Part shown: positions 3,303 to 37,460 of the stretch, piece after piece | Layout: each line of letters opens with the position of its first letter | Numbering within the stretch: position 1 is the first letter of the stretch | Assembly: GCA_020891255.1 (NCBI GenBank) | Contig: BQFW01000007.1 | Span: 1,736,001-1,800,000, forward strand | Direction: 5' to 3' | Length of the DNA: 64,000 nt | Origin: Entomortierella parvispora E1425 | Taxonomy: Eukaryota; Fungi; Mortierellomycota | Notes under the pieces: model-generated | What the model saw: only the letters and a program-made list of their open reading frames with translations | What the model was told of the DNA's origin: nothing | Databases searched by the model: none | Translations under genes and position numbers: made by a program

Positions 3303-4914
3303 ATGAACCATAACGAGTTCAATGCAAAGGCCTCCTCGCAGGTCACGGCTGTCCTCCGGAGCTATTGGAGGGCAAGGAGGGTAAGGAGAGATCGATCGGG
3401 GACGCCTACTTGTTACTTCTATGATCGATGTACTAACTACTTTTACCTCGGTGAAATCTAGTATATGTACATCATCCCTGCCGGACTGGCTCTCTGGACT
3501 TTGATCTTGACGATTTCACACATCTCTAGCTATGATGGCAAGTTGACAAGTGCAGCTATTTTTCTAATGTCTTCTGATACAATGGATAATCGCTCGGCCC
3601 TTCGTCCTAAACAAAACTGTATGTTTTATTTTGGTACAAATAGATCCTGAACACACGCTGGAAAGGAAGGGGCGCTATGACCCAATGTCAACATCGACCT
3701 TGGAACAAAATCCAACAGCCTACAAACCCATCCTCCTAAACCCTCTCCCGCCACAGGAATACACCCACCAATGGCCTCCAAACATCAGGAAACCTCTCTG
3801 TATGCCAAAGATCTTTGTCTACCCCGATAGCGCAAAGATGGGCGAGTTCCAGGTCACGGAGGTTCCACATATGGGTACCAACTACATTGCTGAGCAGATC
3901 CTCTTGGCGCAATTGAGGGACAAGAGCTCGAGTGTGTACAAGAACTATGTGACAGAAAACCCCGAGGAGGCCGATTTCTTTTATATTCCATTTGTGGGAT
4001 CCAAATACCTCTGCGACTGCTGGTTCACGAAAGGAATCAAGGGCGACTGCGATGTTGACGAGCTGTATGCAAAGCCAATGATGCGACACATTCGGGAAGA
4101 CTACCCATACTGGAACAGGACCTGGGGTCGGGATCATATCATGGCTCACCCTATGGACAGTGCATCCAACTACTACAAAACCAAGGATGTGATGGCCAAT
4201 GCTACGTTTTTGACCACTATCGGTGACAAGAGAGTGACCTCCGGTGTAGATGGTCGTTCGAGACGCTATGGCGACATTGTCATCCCCTCAGCCACTGCTC
4301 TCTTGAACCTGGTGGAGGGTATGGTGCCAGAGAGTTATTTAACTGCAGACGGCCAGCCGTTGAAAGGAAAGCGTGATATCTTGGCCCTGTTCGGAGGTCG
4401 TTACCAGGATGTAAAACCCGAGGATTCGTACTCTGCTGGCATCCGATCCTTGCTCTTCAATGGACTGGATCAACAACCGGATTACAGGTTTGCTCCTAAC
4501 TGGGACAACTCTGTCTATACTCAGCTCTTGACTCAATCTCGCTATGGTTTGGCGCCTATGGGCTACACCCTGGACACGACTCGTATCTGGGAATACATTG
4601 CTTTTGGCGTCGTGCCCGTCATCATTGCAGATGGCATTATTGAGCCCTTCGAGGACGATATGGACTGGGACAGCTTCACTGTTCGGGTCCGACGCGCGGA
4701 TGCCCATCGACTTGATGTCATTTTGAGATCCATCTCGGAGAAGGAATATGAGCGCAAGCGAGAGGCTCTTTGGACCCACGGCCGTCAGGCGTTGTTAAAC
4801 AAGGATGCTTGGAATCTGATTGTGCGATCTTTGTGCAGGAAGGGTCAACTGGAGGGTCTGCGCACTATCAACCATGACCACCACATCCCTTTGGAGTCTA
4901 CCGCATCCGTATAG
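3303..4914 (+). CDS. Exostosin-family (GT47) glycosyltransferase, type II membrane protein (exons 3303-3380, 3462-3537, 3644-4914)
   Basis: Basic N-tail, then a TM anchor (YIIPAGLALWTLILTI). Exostosin-type motifs: KIFVY, PEEADFFYIPF, YPYWNRTWGRDH, SRYGLAPMG, GVVPVIIAD, EPFEDDMDWDSF. Perfect TACTAAC branch point in intron 1. Intron 2 is GC-AG. Confidence 0.85.
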
Positions 4915-5758
4915 AAGCAGAAGTCAAAAGGTGATAATCTTCCACCATATTTATTTATATCTTGCGAGACTCATCCTCGCTACATAGACAAAAGATTCCC
5001 TTTTCAAAACAGAAATGCAGATGAAAACTACAAAATAATAATGAGTTCGTTGAAACCTGTGAAATGGCTGCGGGATGGTAACAGAGAGTAAGGAATACTT
5101 CACTATCCAACAGCACTTCAGCGCGCCAGCGTCCCTAGACTTGACTTCCTGGATTTGGCGTATATTGCATGAAGTTGAAGTTGAAGAAAACTAAAACTGG
5201 CCGATTGCACAGGGGTAGCACTGAACACGCCCAGCAACAGCTGTTGTTCTCACTCCTGCCAAAGTTCGAGGGGTGCCTTGTGCGGCTAGGGCTAAAGCTT
5301 AGTGAGGTACAAGGTACCTTCCTGCCCCAAAACCAGATGCTGTACCTTGACCAGCTTATCCTCTTTCGCCCCCTTGCGTTGCGTCCCGCTGGTCCTGCCC
5401 CCTTCCTCCCAGGAAGACAAGGGAAGAAAGGAGAGAAAGGCAGTATGTCGTCGCACACACACACAGGCATGCGTTGTTCCCCACAATCACGAAGAGAAAA
5501 AAATCATGCAAAAGAAGATGAGAGAGAAGGAGCAAGACCATGTCACATTGAGGCAAAGGCCGCAGGAAATCGCCCCTATTCTCCTGCTTTTGTACTTTCC
5601 TTTCTTCCTTCTTCTTTTATCGTCCCTTTCTTGTTTCCTTTCACTCACTCACTCTACCCCAACTCTTGAACCTCTTCTTTCTCGCCCTTACACTTCTTTT
5701 TCTTTCCAACTCGAAACGTCCCCACCCACAGCTCCTCATACCTTTAATCTCTCTCGCC

Positions 5759-7138
5759 ATGGCCAGTAACATCACCCCCGCCGAGGCTCAGCAACTCTCC
5801 AAGGACCAGCAAGCCGCTCAGAACGATGAAAACCTTCTAGCTGAACTCGAGGTTGGCGGTGCCAAACCTATTGTACCTCCACACCTGTTGGCGCGTCTCC
5901 ATCAACACGACAGCCCTGACATGTAAAGAAAAAAAACCTTGTATTGACCGCCTGCAACCGAACCGTGTGAACAATTTTTTTGGTCGCGAATTCCTGTGCT
6001 GAACTTTTTGTCTGTCTTTTGTCTTGTTTCTCTTCATATTGACGACCATCAGTACTCAAGAGGCCATCAACAACAAGCTGGCAGAGGCAGAGGAGCGTCG
6101 CAAGAAGTTGGAGGAAGAGCGCGTTCACAAGGCACGCGAGAACGTGAACCATGCCAAGGAAGTCTCGGAGAGGAACAAGCAGGACCAGGATCAGAACCGA
6201 GACGAATCGTTGGAGCGTCTTCGAGAGAAGCAAGAGAACGCAGAACGAGCACGACAGGAGCAGGTAAAGCAATGACCTCTCTTTCTCTCTCGTGTTCTTT
6301 TTTCCTCGGCTCATTTCTCTATTGATGAAGAGAAGGAAAGGCAAAACGAGCGAAATGACGATTCCATGACAAGAAGGGTGGATTGTAACAAACAAAAGAA
6401 ACAACATAATGTCCATGGTGTATCCTCAACGCTTTTTTCCCCAACACTTCCTCACTAACCAAACGACATCCTCCTTCTCTCGGGTATTAACACAGGAAAG
6501 AGCGCGCTTGGCCAAGTTGGAGGGTCACTCAGCCAAGGTTGCTGCCTTCCAAAAGGAGGAGAGGTAAGCAGGAAGAAGGCACAAAACAATCAGAGGTCTC
6601 ATTACTGCTGTCCTCCCTTCCGGCTACCTGGTTTAGTCCCTCACCAAAGTACCTTTGCTTCTTTTTTTCAATCGTCGTGATTTTTTTACTAGTTTGGCCC
6701 GTGACAACGAGATCAAAGAGATCAAGGAAAAGTTAAACCAAGCGGAAGCACGTCGCAAGGCCTTGGAGGAAGAAAAACTTCAAAAGTTGGAAGAACATCT
6801 TCAAAAGGTGAAGCAGGTCCGGACAGCCGATACAGAATCCCAATATGAACAGCACAAACTGGATTTGGACCAGAAGATGAAGGCGGTCGAGCAGCGAAGA
6901 CTGGATCTCGAGAATGCACTGAAGGAAAAAATCCAGGCTCGACAACTGCTAGCAGATCAAGTTCGTCAACGTATGCATCAGGCGAGCATTGTCCAACTTC
7001 CTTGGTGATGGGTCCACCACCAAACTCTTCCTCTAACTTCTTTCGTTTCTCGCTATTTGTCTTCACTTTTATCTCGGATCGTATATAGGCCAACAAGAGC
7101 AAGGGGCTTCTGTTGTGGAATCCAATGCTGAGGCGTAA
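5759..7138 (+). CDS. Stathmin-like coiled-coil repeat protein, about 255 aa (exons 5759-5922, 6053-6263, 6496-6563, 6693-6970, 7089-7138)
   Basis: All five exons splice in frame with GT-AG ends. The protein has four K-L-x-x-A-E-x-R-R-type helical repeats, e.g. INNKLAEAEERRKK and IKEKLNQAEARRKA. The gene is well supported; the family call rests on motif resemblance only. Confidence 0.7.
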
Positions 7139-7475: not shown

Positions 7476-8966
7476 ATGCACCCTTCAGCGCATCCACTGT
7501 GGCAACCCGAAATACAAAGCGAGGTGGCCCAATACCTTGATAATGCTAGCCTAGCTGCCGCTTCTGCTGTCTGCAGGGACTGGAACGTTGTTTTTCCATG
7601 TTTTCTCTACAAAAATGCCGATCTCGATAACAAAACTACCAACAACCATATCAGCCTCTCTAACCATGCAAAGCTCGTCCGGAATCTGAATTTGTATCTG
7701 TACGAAAAGATGCCGGAACTCTCTCCGTACTTATTCGCCGATCACGACAAGACGAATGGCTTCGTCTTTGATCAGCTCACGAGCCTTAATCTCAAACTGA
7801 CAGAGGAAGACTCTTCAGAGCCCTGGAGTGCGGCCTCGCTGCTTGTCCGGCGGAACTCAAAGCTGGAGAATCTTCAAGTTAGCGACTCATTGTCCGCGAC
7901 GTTCCTCAGGGCTGTTTCAGAATCTTGTCCATGTCTGAAAAAGCTATCTCTTCGGAACCTCGCGCTAGATCGGGAAGCCACAGAGGCGTTAGTGGATTTG
8001 TGCTCAGCAAACACGCTCGTCTCTCTGATATTGGACTACGTTACTTGCTCCAACAGGCAAGCTGTTCACGCCGTGATCCAGGGATCAGACTCACCAGAGC
8101 TCACCCAGTCTTTGAAGCTACAGGTTTTGAAATTCACAGGTAGCTACGGTGTGGTGACCCTTGCTAATCAAATTGCGTGGGCTCAAAGATGCCCCCAGCT
8201 AAAGACGTTGGAGCTCTATTGCCGACTGAGACGTCCCTTCCCAGCCAAGCTACTTTGTGAGGCACTCCCCACAACACTTTGTGAGGTCAATCAATTGCGT
8301 CTCAGTTCCGTTAGGCTGACTCCAGACGATCTGGCTGTAGTTCTGGAGGGCTTTGGACCAGGGCCGCGGATCAAATACTTTGGCCTCGGCAGAAATTTGA
8401 CGGGACCCGTCTCATGGCCACCGACCCTGTGGTCCTTGCTGGAACGCCACAAGTCCGTCCTGACCCACCTAGACATGAAACGCTGCCCGACATTCTCGAG
8501 CGATGCAGTGCAACTTAGCCTAGCTACTTTTCCTCGGCTCGTCCGTCTACAGGCAGGATATCTGATAGCCCAGGATATTCTCGGTAACCCGAATGAAGAG
8601 GATGAGGTAACTCGCATCGTCCCTTGGGTCTGCAAAGGTCTTCGACACCTAGATGTTCACATTCACGGATTTGACAACAAACCTGCCCTCTGGAACGTAC
8701 TTGTGCTGAAGCAGCTTTCGACCTTGGAGGTGCTAGAGACTTTGGATATTCGAATGTTTGAGTATTCATGGCATGACGAGGAATATCGAAGAAACAATAG
8801 CTTGGATTTACGACTCGAGGCCGGTTTGAGAGTTTTGGCGAGCTTGACACGTATGAAACGACTCGACTTTGTACCAGAGCTGCAGCGCGCGGGAACGGAG
8901 GAGTTGGAATGGATGGAGGACGCGTGGCCAGAATTCGTTCCTTCTGATGAGATGTGCACAGAGTAG
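7476..8966 (+). CDS. F-box-like / RNI-type leucine-rich repeat protein, 496 aa, intronless
   Basis: N-terminal HPLWQPEIQSEVAQYL...AVCRDW F-box-like motif, repeated LxxLxL units (CPCLKKLSLR, CPQLKTLEL), and a C-terminal LDLRLEAGLRVLASLTRMKRL...WM...WP block typical of the expanded Mortierella-type F-box/LRR family. Confidence 0.8.
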   Translation: MHPSAHPLWQPEIQSEVAQYLDNASLAAASAVCRDWNVVFPCFLYKNADLDNKTTNNHISLSNHAKLVRNLNLYLYEKMPELSPYLFADHDKTNGFVFDQLTSLNLKLTEEDSSEPWSAASLLVRRNSKLENLQVSDSLSATFLRAVSESCPCLKKLSLRNLALDREATEALVDLCSANTLVSLILDYVTCSNRQAVHAVIQGSDSPELTQSLKLQVLKFTGSYGVVTLANQIAWAQRCPQLKTLELYCRLRRPFPAKLLCEALPTTLCEVNQLRLSSVRLTPDDLAVVLEGFGPGPRIKYFGLGRNLTGPVSWPPTLWSLLERHKSVLTHLDMKRCPTFSSDAVQLSLATFPRLVRLQAGYLIAQDILGNPNEEDEVTRIVPWVCKGLRHLDVHIHGFDNKPALWNVLVLKQLSTLEVLETLDIRMFEYSWHDEEYRRNNSLDLRLEAGLRVLASLTRMKRLDFVPELQRAGTEELEWMEDAWPEFVPSDEMCTE

Positions 8967-25920: not shown

Positions 25921-28208
25921 ATGGATAAGACCGTCGTCGATACGTACGACGAAAAGTTTGAGGCCGAAGCCTCAGTGGGCGCCCATCTGGGTGAAGAGGA
26001 GGACTCTCCCATTGAAGAGGTCCGGGTCACCGTCTCAAGTAAGCGTCCTACATTCATTAGAAAGTTGCCTTTCATGATTTATCAACCTTCCTAACTTCCA
26101 GTGCTTGCCCAATCGTAGATACGGACGACCCATCAATGCCCTGCAATACCTTCCGAATGTGGTCCCTTGGTCTTTTGTTTACAGCGGCCGTTAGTTTCGT
26201 GAACCAGTTCTTTTACCTTCGTCAGACCCAGATTTCAATCGGATATTCCGTCGTAGCCCTGATCTCTCTCCCTATCGGACACTTGATGGCCAGAGTTCTT
26301 CCTACCCGTCAAATGAACATTCTTGGCTGGAAGTTTTCTCTTAACCCTGGACCCTTCTCACTCAAGGAGCACATCTTGATCGGCACAATGGTCTCCTGTA
26401 ACACGAGTACAGCGTACGCTGTCGACATTGTCATCTTGCAACATGTGTATTATGGCGACAAGCAGCCCTTTATCGCTGGGTTGCTTTTGGTCTTGACGAC
26501 CCAGATCACTGGTTTTGCCCTCGCAGGTGCGATCCGTCGATTCTTGGTCCGTCCTGCCCACATGGTGTGGCCCGGAACTTTGGTCACAGCGTCGCTCTTC
26601 CGCTCTTTGCACGCACACGCTCAATCTGAGGAGGAGGATGCTGGGCGCATGTCGAGGATGAAGTACTTCATGATTGTCACGACCGGTTCATTCATTTACT
26701 ACTGGCTCCCAGGCCTGTTGTTCCCAACCATCGGTATGATCTCCTGGATCTGTTGGATCGCTCCCAACAACATTGTTCTTTCACAGCTCACTGGATCCAA
26801 TGGTCTCGGCATTGGCACCATTGCTTTGGATTGGGCCGCAGCATCGTACTATGTGAACCCCTTGGTCACTCCATGGTTCGCTCAAGTCAACATCATTATC
26901 GGCTTCATCTTGGTCACCTATATCATGGTCCCTTGGGCCTATTATACCAACCTGTGGAACTCCAAGAACTACCCAATCTTGTCAGCATCTCTCTTCCGTG
27001 AGGATGGTACACTCTACAACAAGACTTTGATTCTGACCGACAATGTGCTGGACGAGGCAAAGTACCTGGCGTATGGACCCATCCGCATGGATTCTTTCTT
27101 TGCTCTGACGTACGGAGTTGGATTCGCCGGATTGATGGCCACAGTGGTGCACGTAATTCTGTACCATGGGACTGAAATGGTGGCGCGCTGGAAGTCTGCC
27201 CGTGCCGAAAACGAAGATATTCACTCCCGTTTGATGCGCGTCTACCCCGAAGTTCCTGACTGGTGGTACCTGATCCTCTTTGGAATCACCGTTGCCCTGA
27301 GCTTGGTCACCTGTATCGTCTGGGATTTCATGCCCTGGTGGGCCGTCCTCCTGGCCCTGGTCATCGCCATGTTCTTCGTCTTGCCCGTTGGTATTGTCCA
27401 GGCCGTCACGAACCAACAGCCTGGTTTGAACATTGTGACAGAGTACGTGATTGGTTACCTCCTTCCTGGACATGCCATTGCCAACGTCACCTTCAAGACC
27501 TATGGTTACATTGTGAACGTTCAGGCCCTCACCTTTGTGTCGGATTTGAAGTTGGGTCATTACATGAAGATCCCTCCTAGAGTCATGTTCATGGCTCAGC
27601 TTACCTCCACCTTTATCAGTGGTCTCATTAATTTGTCCACAGCCATGTGGCTTGTCAACACTCGCCCGAACATCTGTACACCCAAGGGCTACCCCTTCAC
27701 CTGCCGTAATACCAACACCTTTTATTCGGCTTCGATTATTTGGGGAGCCATCGGCCCTGCCCGAGTCTTTGGTTCAAAGGATGGAGCTCTTTATTCCAAG
27801 GTCCAATGGGGATTCGTAGTCGGTGCTTTGTTGCCAATCCCCTTCTGGTACGCAGCCAAGAAGTTCCCTAACATCCCTTGGTTGAAGTACGTTCATTGGC
27901 CCGTCCTTCTCGCCGCAACGTCCAACATGCCCCCAGCCCTGCCTTACTTCTACTCAAACGGACTGTTTATTGGCTTCATCTTTGCGTTCCTTTTGAGACG
28001 CTACCGTTACAACTGGTGGGCCCGTTACAACTACTTGACCTCGGCCGCTTTGGATTCTGGCGTGGCCGTCTGTGGCCTGGTGATCTTCTTTGCGATCCAG
28101 TCCTGGGATGGAACGGCGCCAACATGGATTGGAAACCCAGCAGATAGCGTTTTTGATCATTGTCCCCTGGGCGGATCTGCCTACAACAAGATCCCAGCGG
28201 CAGCATAG
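25921..28208 (+). CDS. Oligopeptide transporter, OPT family, copy 1 (intron 26039-26118)
   Basis: SPIEEVR, NPGPFSLKEH, LRFLVRP-like RRFLVRPAHMVWP, YPEVPDWWY and KLGHYMKIPPR OPT motifs; many TM helices. Confidence 0.95.
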
Positions 28209-35037: not shown

Positions 35038-37460
35038 ATGTCCAAGGAGGAAGCTTACGTTACTGAAAAGTACGAGGACCAGGAGAAGACCTTCCAAGAT
35101 GTCGAGACCAACAACATCGAGCTCGATGAGCAAGATGACTCGCCCATCGAAGAGGTTCGCGTCACTGTCCCCAGTACGTATTTGATTGTTGCTGTAGCCG
35201 TTGTGAAGCAATTCATCGAGTCCCGTCTAATACGCCTCTCTTCCCTTCTCGTCCCTTTCAGACACCGATGATCCCCAGCTGCCCTACAACACTTTCCGTA
35301 TGTGGTTTTTGGGATTGCTCTTCACAGCCGCCATCTCGTTTGTGAACCAGTTCTTCTACTTGCGTCAAACCAACATTTCTATCGGTTACGCTGTTGTTGC
35401 TTTGGTTGCCCTTCCTTTGGGTCACATTATGGCCCGTGTTTTGCCCACTCGTCAGTTCAATATTTTCGGCTACAAGTGCTCGCTCAACCCTGGACCATTC
35501 TCCATCAAGGAGCATGTCCTCATTGGTACAATGGCCGCCTGTAACACCTCCACTGCCTACGCCGTCGATATTGTCATCATCCAAAAGATCTACTACCAAG
35601 ACCACAAGAACTTTGCCGCTTCTCTGTTCTTGGTTTTGACCACTCAAATCACCGGTTTCGCCTTGGCTGGTGGCATTCGTCGCTTCTTGGTTCGTCCCGC
35701 TCACATGGTCTGGCCCCAGACTTTGGTCACGGCCTCCCTCTTCCGTTCGCTCCACGCCGAGATGACTGAGGACGACAACGGTCGCATGTCGCGTATGAAG
35801 TACTACATGATCGTCACCGGTTGCATGTTCTGCTACTACTTTTTGCCAGGCTTGATCTTCCCAACGATTGGTTTTATTTCCTGGATCTGCTGGCTCGCTC
35901 CCAACAACAAGGTCCTCGCCCAGATCACAGGCTCCAATGGACTTGGTATCGGAACCCTCGCCTTCGATTGGTCTGCCTACACTTCTCTCATCGGTCCCCT
36001 TGTTACCCCCTGGTTTGCTCAGGTCAACATCATTATCGGTTTTGTCCTCGTCACCTACATCATGGTGCCTTGGGCTTACTACTCCAACCTATGGGACTCC
36101 AAGAACTTCCCTATTCTCACTGCAACCTTGTTCTTGAACAACGGAAGTGCCTACAATGTCTCCAAGGTCCTTAGCAGAGATGGCGGCGATTTGAGTGAAG
36201 CTGCCTACCAAGCTTATGGTCCTCTCCGCATGGACTCGTTCTTTGCTCTGACCTACGGAGTTGGTTTCGCTGGTTTGACTGCCACTTTGGTCCATGTGAT
36301 GCTCCACAACGGCCCCGAGATTGTTGCCCGCTGGAAGTCTGCCCGTGCCGAGAACGAGGATATCCACTCCCGTTTGATGCGCGTCTACCCCGAGGTCCCT
36401 GACTGGTGGTATGGACTTTTGTTCATCGTTACCTTCGCTTTGTCCATGGTGACTTGTGTTGTCTGGGACTACATGCCTTGGTGGGCCCTCCTTTTGGCTC
36501 TTTTCATTGCCATCTTCTTTGTTCTTCCTGTCGGTATTGTCCAGGCTGTCACCAACCAGCAGCCCGGTTTGAACATTGTGACAGAGTACATTATCGGTTA
36601 CGCTCTTCCTGGCCACCCCATCGCCAATGTCACTTTCAAGACCTACGGTTACATTGTTAACGTGCAGGCCTTGAACTTCGTCTCTGACTTGAAGTTGGGT
36701 CACTACATGAAGATCCCTCCTCGCATCATGTTCATGGCTCAGTTGATCTCTGCCATTATCTCTGCCATCGTCAACTTGGGCACTGCCCTTTGGTTGGTCA
36801 ACACTCAGCCCCATATTTGCAGCAAGGAGGGGTACCCCTTCACTTGCCGTAACACCAACACCTTCTACTCGGCCTCGGTCATTTGGGGTGCTATCGGTCC
36901 CGCTCGTGTCTTTGGTAGCAAGGATGGAGCCATCTATGGCTCTGTCCAGTGGGGTTTCGTTGTTGGAGCTCTGTTGCCTTTGGTCTTCTGGTTGGCTTCG
37001 CGCAAGTGGCCCAACGTTGCTTGGTTGAAGTATGTCCACTGGCCCGTGCTTTTGGCTGCCACCTCCAACATGCCCCCATACCTTCCCTACATGTACTCCA
37101 ACGGTCTCTTTGTCGGATTCGTCTTTGCCTTCTGGTTGAGACGTTACCGCTACGGATGGTGGTCCCGTTACAACTACCTTACCTCGGCCGCCTTGGACTC
37201 GGGTATCGCTGTTTCCGGTCTCGTCATCTTCTTTGCCATTCAAATTTGGGGTGGTGCGTTCCCTACCTGGTGGGGTAATCCTTCCCAGCTCACTCCAACC
37301 AACGCGGATGCTCTTGACCACTGCTACTATGGTCAGACCAACTGTAAGTTATTTTCACTGGGCCTTGTCAATGTTTTTTTTTCCTTTCTCAATGTTCTCT
37401 GTGATCGTAATTGCTAACACTTTCCTCTGTCTTCCTCTCTTTCTAGTCTATGGCGAATAA
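35038..37460 (+). CDS. Oligopeptide transporter, OPT family, copy 3 (introns 35174-35261 and 37344-37446)
   Basis: Same OPT motifs as copy 1 with an uninterrupted frame; last exon gives FYGE*. Confidence 0.94.

What the first reader, a model, noticed from the sequence alone, without database searches (positions are those of the whole stretch)
5759..7138. Four-repeat stathmin-like protein in a fungus: candidate tubulin-sequestering factor
Seen: the spliced protein has four helical repeats, KLAEAEERRKKLEEERVHKARENVNHAKEV, KQENAERARQEQERARLAKLEGHSAKV, KLNQAEARRKALEEEKLQKLEEHLQKVKQV and KMKAVEQRRLDLENALKEKI. They are spaced 51, 47 and 48 residues apart and follow a Pro-rich linker (KPIVPPHLLARL...SPD). 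Known, from memory: vertebrate stathmin reads IQKKLEAAEERRK...EHEKEV and its two tubulin-binding repeats are 51 residues apart. Insect stathmins carry extra repeats and bind more tubulin dimers. Stathmins are generally regarded as animal proteins and are absent from yeasts. Inference: this could be a fungal stathmin-like-domain protein that binds up to four tubulin dimers, with a possible CDK/MAPK site at the SP just before repeat 1.
Basis: partly seen in the sequence, partly recalled or inferred. Interest (0 to 1): 0.78.

Follow-up and report, generated by a model that had tools for sequence, protein, structure and literature searches.

The report
Fungal double stathmin-like tubulin-binding protein
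A Mortierella-type soil fungus has an intact five-exon gene for a 256-residue protein made of two back-to-back stathmin-like domains; it is a true relative of animal stathmin, which sequesters tubulin, but databases already tag such fungal proteins, one 2024 paper mentions them, and none has been studied.

Summary
Window 5759-7138 (+) is a five-exon GT-AG gene of 771 coding bases, giving 256 aa. The public annotation of the same DNA has the same span and product length, and six full-length Mortierellaceae orthologues match it. The four quoted repeats are there, spaced 51/47/48 residues (51/47/51 in orthologues).

The stathmin reading is supported. Exon 4 passes Pfam Stathmin (36.6 bits) and exon 2 falls just short (24.1, cut-off 24.7). 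Orthologues score 46-68 bits with two domain hits each. An HMM built only from animal stathmins scores the exons 21 and 35 bits, against 11 at most for reversed or shuffled copies. A profile built only from Mortierellaceae proteins finds stathmin/RB3 as its top 20 solved-structure hits. So the protein carries two tandem stathmin-like domains behind one N-terminal Pro-rich region.

Relatives occur in Endogone, Gigaspora (UniRef name "Stathmin") and Rozella. The duplication predates Mortierellaceae.

Binding of four tubulin dimers and the SP phosphosite remain untested. The SP is kept in 7 of 10 orthologues and lacks a CDK consensus. The "animal-only" premise is outdated: Deng et al. 2024 already list fungal stathmins.

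Verdict: a new, unstudied member of a known family. The scan had not noted it before.

The parts
5759..5922 (+). Exon 1: start codon and N-terminal region (residues 1-54 plus 2 nt), with the cap-like LLAELEV segment, the Pro-rich linker KPIVPPHLLARL and the SP site
   Evidence: This region aligns to the N-terminus of Gigaspora rosea 'Stathmin' (hhalign prob 98, E 1.5e-13). On its own it has no Pfam hit.
5923..6052 (+). Intron 1 (130 nt, GTAAAG...CAG), phase 2
   Evidence: the junction is supported by orthologues.
6053..6263 (+). Exon 2: first stathmin-like domain, repeat 1 (6075-6164) and the start of repeat 2 (6228-6263)
   Evidence: Pfam Stathmin 24.1 bits, E 3.8e-5, profile 43-111. Animal-only HMM 21.1 bits against at most 7.1 for shuffles.
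6264..6495 (+). Intron 2 (232 nt, GTAAAG...CAG), phase 0
6496..6563 (+). Exon 3: rest of repeat 2 (6496-6540) and the junction to the second domain
   Evidence: Too short for a Pfham hit of its own; in orthologues P0017 and P0019 the first domain matches Pfam profile positions up to 132-133.
6564..6692 (+). Intron 3 (129 nt, GTAAGC...TAG), phase 2. This is the same phase as intron 1, so exons 2+3 (279 nt) form a frame-neutral cassette.
6693..6970 (+). Exon 4: complete second stathmin-like domain, repeat 3 (6730-6819) and repeat 4 (6874-6933)
   Evidence: Pfam Stathmin 36.6 bits (cut-off 24.7), E 5.3e-9, profile 43-132. Animal-only HMM 35.0 bits.
6971..7088 (+). Intron 4 (118 nt, GTATGC...TAG), phase 1
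   Evidence: The QQEQ tail of the orthologues is encoded only if this intron is removed.
7089..7138 (+). Exon 5: C-terminal tail and TAA stop

Best explanation
The gene encodes a genuine member of the stathmin family, descended from the same ancestor as animal stathmins. The protein is soluble: its N-terminus (MASN...) has no Gly2 or Cys for lipid anchoring. One N-terminal cap-like and Pro-rich region is followed by two tandem stathmin-like helical domains, which gives four KLxxAExRRK-led repeats on a long, highly charged helix that is not a coiled coil. By analogy with stathmin/RB3, it most likely binds soluble alpha/beta-tubulin dimers side-on along this helix, one dimer per repeat, with the N-terminal segment capping the end. 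That would hold two to four dimers in a curved complex that cannot polymerise, and so buffer or sense free tubulin. Shown here: homology, architecture, repeat register, the predicted helix, conservation across early-diverging fungi, and a domain duplication older than Mortierellaceae. Inferred: tubulin binding, stoichiometry and any control by phosphorylation.
For: Pfam Stathmin hits exon 4 above the curated cut-off and exon 2 at 24.1 against 24.7 bits, both in register with the helical part of the profile. Six full-length orthologues score 46-68 bits with two stretches each. An animal-only HMM scores the exons 21.1 and 35.0 bits; reversed copies score 0.5 and -2.3, and the best of 1000 shuffles score 7.1 and 10.7. 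A Mortierellaceae-only profile searched against all PDB sequences finds only Stathmin-4/RB3/stathmin chains in its top 20 (E 1e-5 to 4e-4), aligned without gaps over 97-99 residues; the next unrelated hits have E > 0.3. hhalign of the fungal against the animal alignment gives prob 96.3, E 1.5e-9 for domain 2 and prob 94.4, E 9e-8 for domain 1. The N-terminal region aligns to Gigaspora 'Stathmin', whose own Pfam match starts at profile position 9, inside the cap region. The AF2 model of orthologue P0002 has helices 56-102 and 109-259 with pLDDT above 90. Apolar residues show no 3.5-residue periodicity (p 0.44 and 0.61). The per-column conservation of the fungal domains correlates with that of animal stathmins (Spearman 0.25-0.30; 0 or 1 of 90 circular shifts reach it), and domain 2 conservation has a 3.6-residue period (p about 0.014), as expected for one binding face.
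Against: There is no experimental or expression evidence: no RNA run was listed. Single-sequence searches of the exons against PDB give only E 4-9 for stathmin-4. hhalign did not carry the Mortierellaceae N-terminus onto the animal cap directly; the link runs through Gigaspora. The repeat spacing is 51/47/48 in this protein, not a uniform 51, so a continuous four-dimer register would need local unwinding. The vertebrate regulatory serines are not conserved. The conservation and periodicity signals are modest, and they are absent in domain 1 and in the small animal set. The fold search found nothing, as expected for a lone helix.
Confidence: 0.7

Rival explanations
1. It is a true stathmin homologue, but its working form binds only two dimers. 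Either only one domain is competent, or skipping of the frame-neutral cassette formed by exons 2+3 yields a cap plus a single domain. This would resemble Drosophila stai isoforms, which differ by one alternative exon.
For: Introns 1 and 3 share phase 2, and exons 2+3 total 279 nt. The Podila humilis gene model P0005 (158 aa) joins exon 1 directly to the second domain. Domain 2 scores much better than domain 1 against Pfam. The spacings of 47 and 48 depart from 51. Drosophila isoforms that include or skip exon 6 are described in PMC3694009.
Against: Six of the Mortierellaceae models carry both domains, and both are highly conserved. Fungal domain-1 copies form one clade that includes Endogone, Gigaspora and Rozella (95/92), so domain 1 has been under long-term selection. 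The Podila locus still holds most of exon 2 and an intact exon 3, so its short model may reflect an assembly or annotation fault.
Confidence: 0.25
2. It is homologous to stathmin but has changed function. The charged helix would then act as a single-alpha-helix spacer, a binder of the microtubule lattice or a scaffold for another partner, rather than sequestering free tubulin.
For: The helix is 41-51% charged and shows a mild excess of E/D(i) to K/R(i+4) pairs (7-8 observed against 4.3-4.4 +/- 1.6). The regulatory serines of vertebrate stathmin are missing. Deng et al. 2024 argue that some stathmins sense tubulin rather than sequester it (PMC11238091).
Against: The same columns are conserved in the fungal and animal domains. 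The KLxxAExRRK cores and the 51-residue register are kept across roughly a billion years (from memory) of divergence, which a mere spacer would not need.
Confidence: 0.2
3. It is not a homologue at all, but a generic E/K/R-rich helix or coiled coil that matches the stathmin profile through composition alone.
For: The composition is strongly biased, and HMMER reports a bias term of 16-20 bits. BLASTP of exon 2 against exon 4 is only marginal (E 0.042 over 13 residues).
Against: Reversed and shuffled sequences of the same composition score at most 10.7 bits, against 21-35 for the real ones. The top 20 PDB hits of the fungal profile are all stathmins, while other coiled coils have E > 0.3. Stathmin is the only Pfam family hit at E < 0.01. 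Apolar residues show no heptad periodicity.
Confidence: 0.04

Closest known systems
Vertebrate stathmin (STMN1) and the RB3 stathmin-like domain (PDB chains such as 1SA0_E, 3RYC_E, 4I4T_E)
   Same: Both have a soluble N-terminus with no lipid anchor, a Pro-rich linker, and a long charged helix opening with KLxxAEERRK. The second repeat lies 51 residues downstream, and the C-terminal end reads ...VR.R. Fungal domain 2 aligns without gaps over 97-104 residues to RB3/stathmin.
   Different: The fungal protein carries the helical domain twice in tandem, giving four repeats and 256 aa. Ser16, Ser25, Ser38 and Ser63 are not conserved. All four fungal repeats keep the AExRRK core, whereas animal repeat 2 has diverged. 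The cap strand reads LAELEV rather than AFELIL.
Drosophila stathmin (stai) and other arthropod multi-repeat stathmins
   Same: These are natural stathmins with more than two tubulin-binding repeats and variable stoichiometry (Lachkar et al. 2010, cited through the reference list of PMC3694009). Their isoforms differ by an optional exon. They were retrieved by the mixed profile.
   Different: The arthropod repeats arose within animals. In the domain tree the five animal domains form their own group (90/90), apart from the fungal domain-1 clade. The spacing also differs: about 42 residues in the animal-like metagenome proteins P0012 and P0024.
Engineered stathmin-like domain R4 (PDB 4F61 chain I, 240 aa)
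   Same: It is a single chain of similar length with one cap and four helical repeats. From memory, it was designed to hold four tubulin dimers in a curved row. It appears among the PDB hits of the fungal profile (E 3e-4).
   Different: It is man-made by copying RB3 modules at a uniform period. The fungal protein is natural and has spacings of 51/47/48. Its stoichiometry is unknown.
STMND1 and choanoflagellate stathmins (Deng et al. 2024, PMC11238091)
   Same: They belong to the same family and have been proposed as the oldest stathmin clade. That paper also counts fungal proteins among the non-metazoan stathmins.
   Different: STMND1 has an N-terminal MGCG dual-lipidation motif and an NLS embedded in the domain, and it localises to cilia. 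The fungal protein starts MASN with no Gly2 or Cys3. Mortierellaceae, Endogone and Gigaspora have no cilia (established knowledge).
Other fungal PF00836 proteins: Gigaspora rosea 'Stathmin' (P0028), Endogone sp. (P0023), Rozella allomycis EPZ36268.1 (P0009), Mortierellaceae hypothetical proteins (P0002, P0016-P0020)
   Same: These are direct relatives. Mortierellaceae proteins are 70-84% identical per domain. They share the four-repeat layout, and the Podila locus shares microsynteny with transthyretin, RPS8e and POP1.
   Different: None has been characterised. The window protein has a 3-residue deletion between repeats 3 and 4 (48 instead of 51). The public record of its product carries no Pfam hit.

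Membership tests
Stathmin family (Pfam PF00836, stathmin-like domain) | Match to the curated family HMM above its gathering score | tested here: met
Exon 4 alone scores 36.6 bits (cut-off 24.7) and exon 2 alone scores 24.1 bits. Full-length orthologues score 46-68 bits with two stretches each.
Stathmin family (Pfam PF00836, stathmin-like domain) | Reciprocal recognition: a profile of the candidate family retrieves bona fide stathmins first, and the signal depends on residue order rather than composition | tested here: met
   The Mortierellaceae-only profile against PDB has stathmin/RB3 as all of its top 20 hits. hhalign against animal stathmins gives prob 96.3 and 94.4. Reversed and shuffled controls score at most 10.7 bits.
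Stathmin family (Pfam PF00836, stathmin-like domain) | Two helical tubulin-binding repeats about 51 residues apart on one long helix | tested here: met
   Domain 1 has a spacing of 51. Domain 2 has 48 in the window and 51 in orthologues. The alignment to RB3 is gapless. The AF2 model of P0002 has helices 56-102 and 109-259.
Stathmin family (Pfam PF00836, stathmin-like domain) | N-terminal capping segment (a beta-hairpin on alpha-tubulin) followed by a Pro-rich linker | tested here: inconclusive
   Exon 1 has no Pfam hit, and hhalign to animals stops at the start of the helix. The region does align to Gigaspora's N-terminus, and Gigaspora matches the Pfam profile from position 9. The evidence is therefore indirect.
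Stathmin family (Pfam PF00836, stathmin-like domain) | Regulatory serine phosphosites (vertebrate Ser16, Ser25, Ser38, Ser63) | tested here: not met
   The position of Ser63 holds Lys in repeat 1 and Ala in repeat 3. The only candidate is S/T-P before the helix. It is present in 7 of 10 orthologues and is followed by Asp. These sites are vertebrate features rather than family-defining ones.
Stathmin family (Pfam PF00836, stathmin-like domain) | Binds alpha/beta-tubulin dimers in a curved complex and inhibits polymerisation | not testable with these tools
   No multimer modelling or biochemistry is available here. The only indirect support is the shared conservation pattern and the 3.6-residue periodicity in domain 2.
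STMND1 subfamily | N-terminal MGCG myristoylation/palmitoylation motif | tested here: not met
   The N-terminus is MASNIT, and exon 1 contains no Cys. The motif is as given in PMC11238091.
Canonical coiled coil | Heptad (3.5-residue) periodicity of apolar residues | tested here: not met
   The power at period 3.5 is no higher than in shuffles (p 0.44 and 0.61). Apolar content is 11-24%.

The most novel reading that the evidence does not exclude
Early-diverging fungi have kept, since before the Mortierellomycota/Mucoromycota/Glomeromycota split and possibly since Rozella, a natural stathmin with one cap and four repeats. It would hold four tubulin dimers in one curved complex, as a natural counterpart of the engineered R4 scaffold. 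The frame-neutral cassette formed by exons 2+3 could let splicing switch between a two-dimer and a four-dimer form. Its retention in fungi that have lost cilia would show that the ancestral opisthokont stathmin served cytoplasmic microtubules and not only cilia.
Probability: 0.25. Interest if true: 0.65.

Novelty: new member of a known kind. Interest (0 to 1): 0.45.

Why it matters
Stathmin is a textbook regulator of animal microtubules and is relevant to cancer and neurodegeneration, yet its cellular role is still debated: it may sequester tubulin or sense it. A clear, conserved stathmin in aflagellate filamentous fungi gives an independent lineage in which to ask what the ancestral protein did. 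It also bears on the 2024 proposal that the oldest stathmins were cilium-related. The four-repeat design is a natural test of whether tandem stathmin-like domains assemble longer curved tubulin oligomers. Together with earlier notes in this scan of Tau-type repeats and a spectraplakin in the same genome, it adds to a picture in which Mortierella-type fungi keep an 'animal-like' set of microtubule regulators that Dikarya seem to lack. The value is limited, because the family assignment is already automatic in databases and fungal members have been listed in print.

Tried and rejected
1. Single-sequence phmmer of exons 2 and 4 against PDB gave only weak stathmin-4 hits (E 4-9) among unrelated helices. 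Profiles were needed.

2. Foldseek of the AF2 model of orthologue P0002 against PDB found nothing with E below 2.9. A lone long helix is uninformative for a fold search.

3. No RNA-seq run was listed. Exon usage and the possible cassette skipping stay untested.

4. BLASTP of exon 2 against exon 4 was marginal (E 0.042). The internal duplication is seen only at profile level, with repeat 1 matching repeat 3 at prob 95, E 3.9e-8.

5. The single-protein search of 1.84 billion representatives with exon 4 gave only 12 hits at E <= 0.001, all fungal or metagenomic, and did not reach animal stathmins.

6. The profile search used alignment A3, which contains the animal-like metagenome protein P0012. 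Its many arthropod and vertebrate hits are therefore partly built in, and I do not count them as a clean reciprocal test.

7. The antisense ORFs 5868-6416 and 6722-7102 have no Pfam hit and were rejected as genes.

8. Four literature searches for stathmin together with fungal taxa found no functional study. Lachkar et al. 2010 is not held.

9. The supplementary species list of Deng et al. 2024 is not held.

10. Exons were used by reference, and stored orthologues served as full-length proxies. A variable that concatenated the exon translations was created in the script but was never used, printed or saved.

Full report
**What is in the sequence**

On the + strand, an ATG at 5759 opens a gene of five exons: 5759-5922, 6053-6263, 6496-6563, 6693-6970 and 7089-7138. 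The four introns are GT...AG and measure 130, 232, 129 and 118 nt. The exons sum to 771 nt, which is 256 codons plus TAA.

They lie at 6075-6164, at 6228-6263 plus 6496-6540, at 6730-6819 and at 6874-6933. The Pro-rich stretch lies at 5834-5920. The first lysine of each repeat falls at residues 63, 114, 161 and 209, which gives the claimed spacings of 51, 47 and 48.

The public annotation of the identical DNA (GCA_020891255.1, record BQFW01000007.1) calls a gene with exactly this span and a 256-residue product, with no Pfam hit on record. The exon translations tile without gaps onto six independently annotated full-length Mortierellaceae proteins of 256-304 aa, with one residue at each split codon. 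No RNA run was listed for this stretch, so the splicing rests on comparative evidence alone. The antisense ORFs have no family match.

**Is the stathmin resemblance real?**

The evidence for true homology is as follows.

- **Pfam on the window exons.** Pfam's Stathmin model (PF00836) is the only family hit at E < 0.01. Exon 4 scores 36.6 bits (cut-off 24.7, E 5.3e-9, profile 43-132 of 136). Exon 2 scores 24.1 bits (E 3.8e-5, profile 43-111).
- **Pfam on orthologues.** Full-length orthologues score 46-68 bits, each with two matched stretches. In some of them the first domain is the better one and reaches profile position 133.
- **Composition control.** Such charged helices invite composition artefacts, so I built an HMM from five animal stathmins only. 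The real exons score 21.1 and 35.0 bits. Their reversed copies score 0.5 and -2.3, and the best of 1000 shuffles score 7.1 and 10.7.
- **Reverse direction.** A profile built only from the six Mortierellaceae proteins was searched against all PDB sequences. Its top 20 hits are all Stathmin-4/RB3/stathmin chains (E 1e-5 to 4e-4), aligned without a gap over 97-99 residues. The next unrelated proteins have E > 0.3.
- **Profile against profile.** hhalign of the fungal against the animal alignment gives probability 96.3 (E 1.5e-9, 104 columns) for the second domain and 94.4 (E 9e-8, 63 columns) for the first.

Single-sequence comparisons are weak. The relation is therefore remote but specific.

**Architecture**

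The protein has one N-terminal region followed by two tandem stathmin-like helical domains, and so four repeats. At profile level repeat 1 matches repeat 3 (probability 95, E 3.9e-8). This fits duplication of a whole two-repeat domain.

The AF2 model of orthologue P0002 has helices 56-102 and 109-259 at pLDDT above 90. The second of these runs unbroken from repeat 2 through repeat 4. The helical exons are 41-51% charged with 11-24% apolar residues. They show no heptad periodicity (p 0.44 and 0.61), so this is not a coiled coil.

The N-terminus (MASN..., no Gly2 or Cys) gives no sign of lipid anchoring. The N-terminal segment LLAELEV...KPIVPPHLLARL does not reach the animal cap region by direct profile comparison. 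It does align to the N-terminus of the Gigaspora rosea protein (probability 98, E 1.5e-13), and that protein matches the Pfam profile from position 9. A cap element is therefore likely but shown only indirectly.

**Relatives and history**

A search of 1.84 billion representatives with exon 4 found 12 proteins at E <= 0.001. Among those with a source name are Mortierella sp. AD094, Podila humilis and Rozella allomycis; the rest are unnamed metagenome proteins. Every named one is annotated 'hypothetical protein'. Word and profile searches added further Mortierellaceae, Endogone sp. and Gigaspora rosea, whose UniRef name is 'Stathmin'. All carry precomputed PF00836. The many animal hits are partly built in, because the query alignment held one animal-like metagenome protein.

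The four-repeat layout is shared by Rozella, Endogone and a metagenome protein. Spacings are 51/47/51 in Mortierellaceae; the window protein has a 3-residue deletion that gives 48.

In a tree of single domains, all fungal first domains form one clade (95/92), apart from the second domains and the animal domains. AU tests reject a duplication private to Mortierellaceae (p 0.006) or to the metagenome lineage (p 0.0125). They do not reject one private to Rozella (p 0.20). These groups were named after the tree had been seen, and the alignment has only 100 columns.

The Podila locus shares neighbours with the window: transthyretin, RPS8e and POP1.

**How it most likely works**

By homology, the helix should lie side-on along alpha/beta-tubulin dimers, one repeat per dimer, with the N-terminal segment capping the free end. 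That would hold two to four dimers in a curved complex that cannot polymerise.

Indirect support is modest. The per-column conservation of the fungal domains correlates with that of animal stathmins (Spearman 0.25-0.30; 0 or 1 of 90 circular shifts reach it). Conservation in the second domain has a 3.6-residue period (p about 0.014), as expected for one conserved helix face. The first domain and the small animal set show no significant period.

Binding, stoichiometry and regulation are inferences. The uneven spacing of 51/47/48 argues that a strict four-dimer register would need some local adjustment.

The SP before repeat 1 is S/T-P in 7 of 10 Mortierellaceae sequences and NP or NS in the others. 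It is followed by Asp, so it is at most a minimal proline-directed site. The residue at the place of vertebrate Ser63 is Lys or Ala.

Introns 1 and 3 share a phase, and exons 2+3 total 279 nt. Skipping this cassette would give a cap plus a single domain, which is the form annotated in Podila humilis (P0005). Whether that form exists as RNA is unknown.

**Comparison with what is known**

The protein meets the sequence-defined criteria of the stathmin family. The closest solved relatives are RB3/stathmin-4 and stathmin. Multi-repeat stathmins are known from Drosophila (the title of Lachkar et al. 2010, cited in PMC3694009). An engineered four-repeat domain, R4, is in the PDB (4F61).

The premise that stathmins are animal-only is outdated. 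Deng et al. [quoted passage not shown] That paper does not discuss tandem domains. I found no functional study of any fungal stathmin. The same paper proposes cilium-related roles for the oldest stathmins. The presence of the family in aflagellate Mortierellaceae, Endogone and Gigaspora bears on that idea.

Exons were searched by reference, and stored orthologues served as full-length proxies. The species name Entomortierella parvispora comes from another agent's note, and I did not verify it.

**Verdict**

This is a real, intact gene and a genuine but unstudied fungal member of the stathmin family, with a conserved double-domain layout. It is of moderate interest. The family call itself is already automatic in public databases.

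Noticed in passing
L001:3150-3720 (Podila humilis, JAAAIR010000172.1): The annotated 158-aa orthologue P0005 skips the first domain. The 'intron' still holds most of exon 2 and an intact exon 3, both open. The part encoding the KLAEAEERRK core is missing, however, and a 17-nt poly-A run sits in its place. The remaining exon 2 would be out of frame with exon 1. This is either recent decay or an assembly or annotation fault.
   Followed up: partly
window 5759-7138 / L002:2284-3663: The public record's 256-aa product has no Pfam hit on file, although its orthologues in six other Mortierellaceae assemblies are tagged PF00836. The protein also did not appear in the word-based searches.
   Followed up: partly
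window 7476-8966 (+): A single-exon 496-aa protein with an F-box-like motif (PF12937, 23.3 bits, just under the cut-off) lies between the stathmin-like gene and the transthyretin gene. It is absent from that position in the Podila humilis locus.
   Followed up: partly
window 26136-28208 (+) and 35300-37417 (+): Two large single-ORF OPT oligopeptide transporter genes (PF03169, 614 and 619 bits) lie about 7 kb apart on the same strand. They are probably tandem paralogues.
   Followed up: no
window 3631-4914 (+): An Exostosin/GT47 glycosyltransferase-like gene (PF03016, E 5.6e-39) lies upstream. The public model gives a 474-aa product.
   Followed up: no
window 5453-5466 and 5580-5758: A short (CA)n run and a long pyrimidine-rich (CT) tract lie directly upstream of the start codon. 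This is probably the promoter or 5' UTR region.
   Followed up: no
P0016, P0017, P0023 (orthologue gene models): Several public orthologue models look mis-spliced. P0016 has an 8-residue Pro-rich insertion at the junction of the two domains. P0017 has a C-terminal extension where intron 4 seems to be read through. Endogone P0023 has a hydrophobic block of about 25 residues inside the second domain that looks like a retained intron.
   Followed up: no
P0012, P0024 (soil metagenome proteins): These stathmins have three near-identical KLKAAEERRK repeats only 41-42 residues apart and an N-terminus like that of mite stathmin. They may be an unusually short-period multi-repeat animal form.
   Followed up: no
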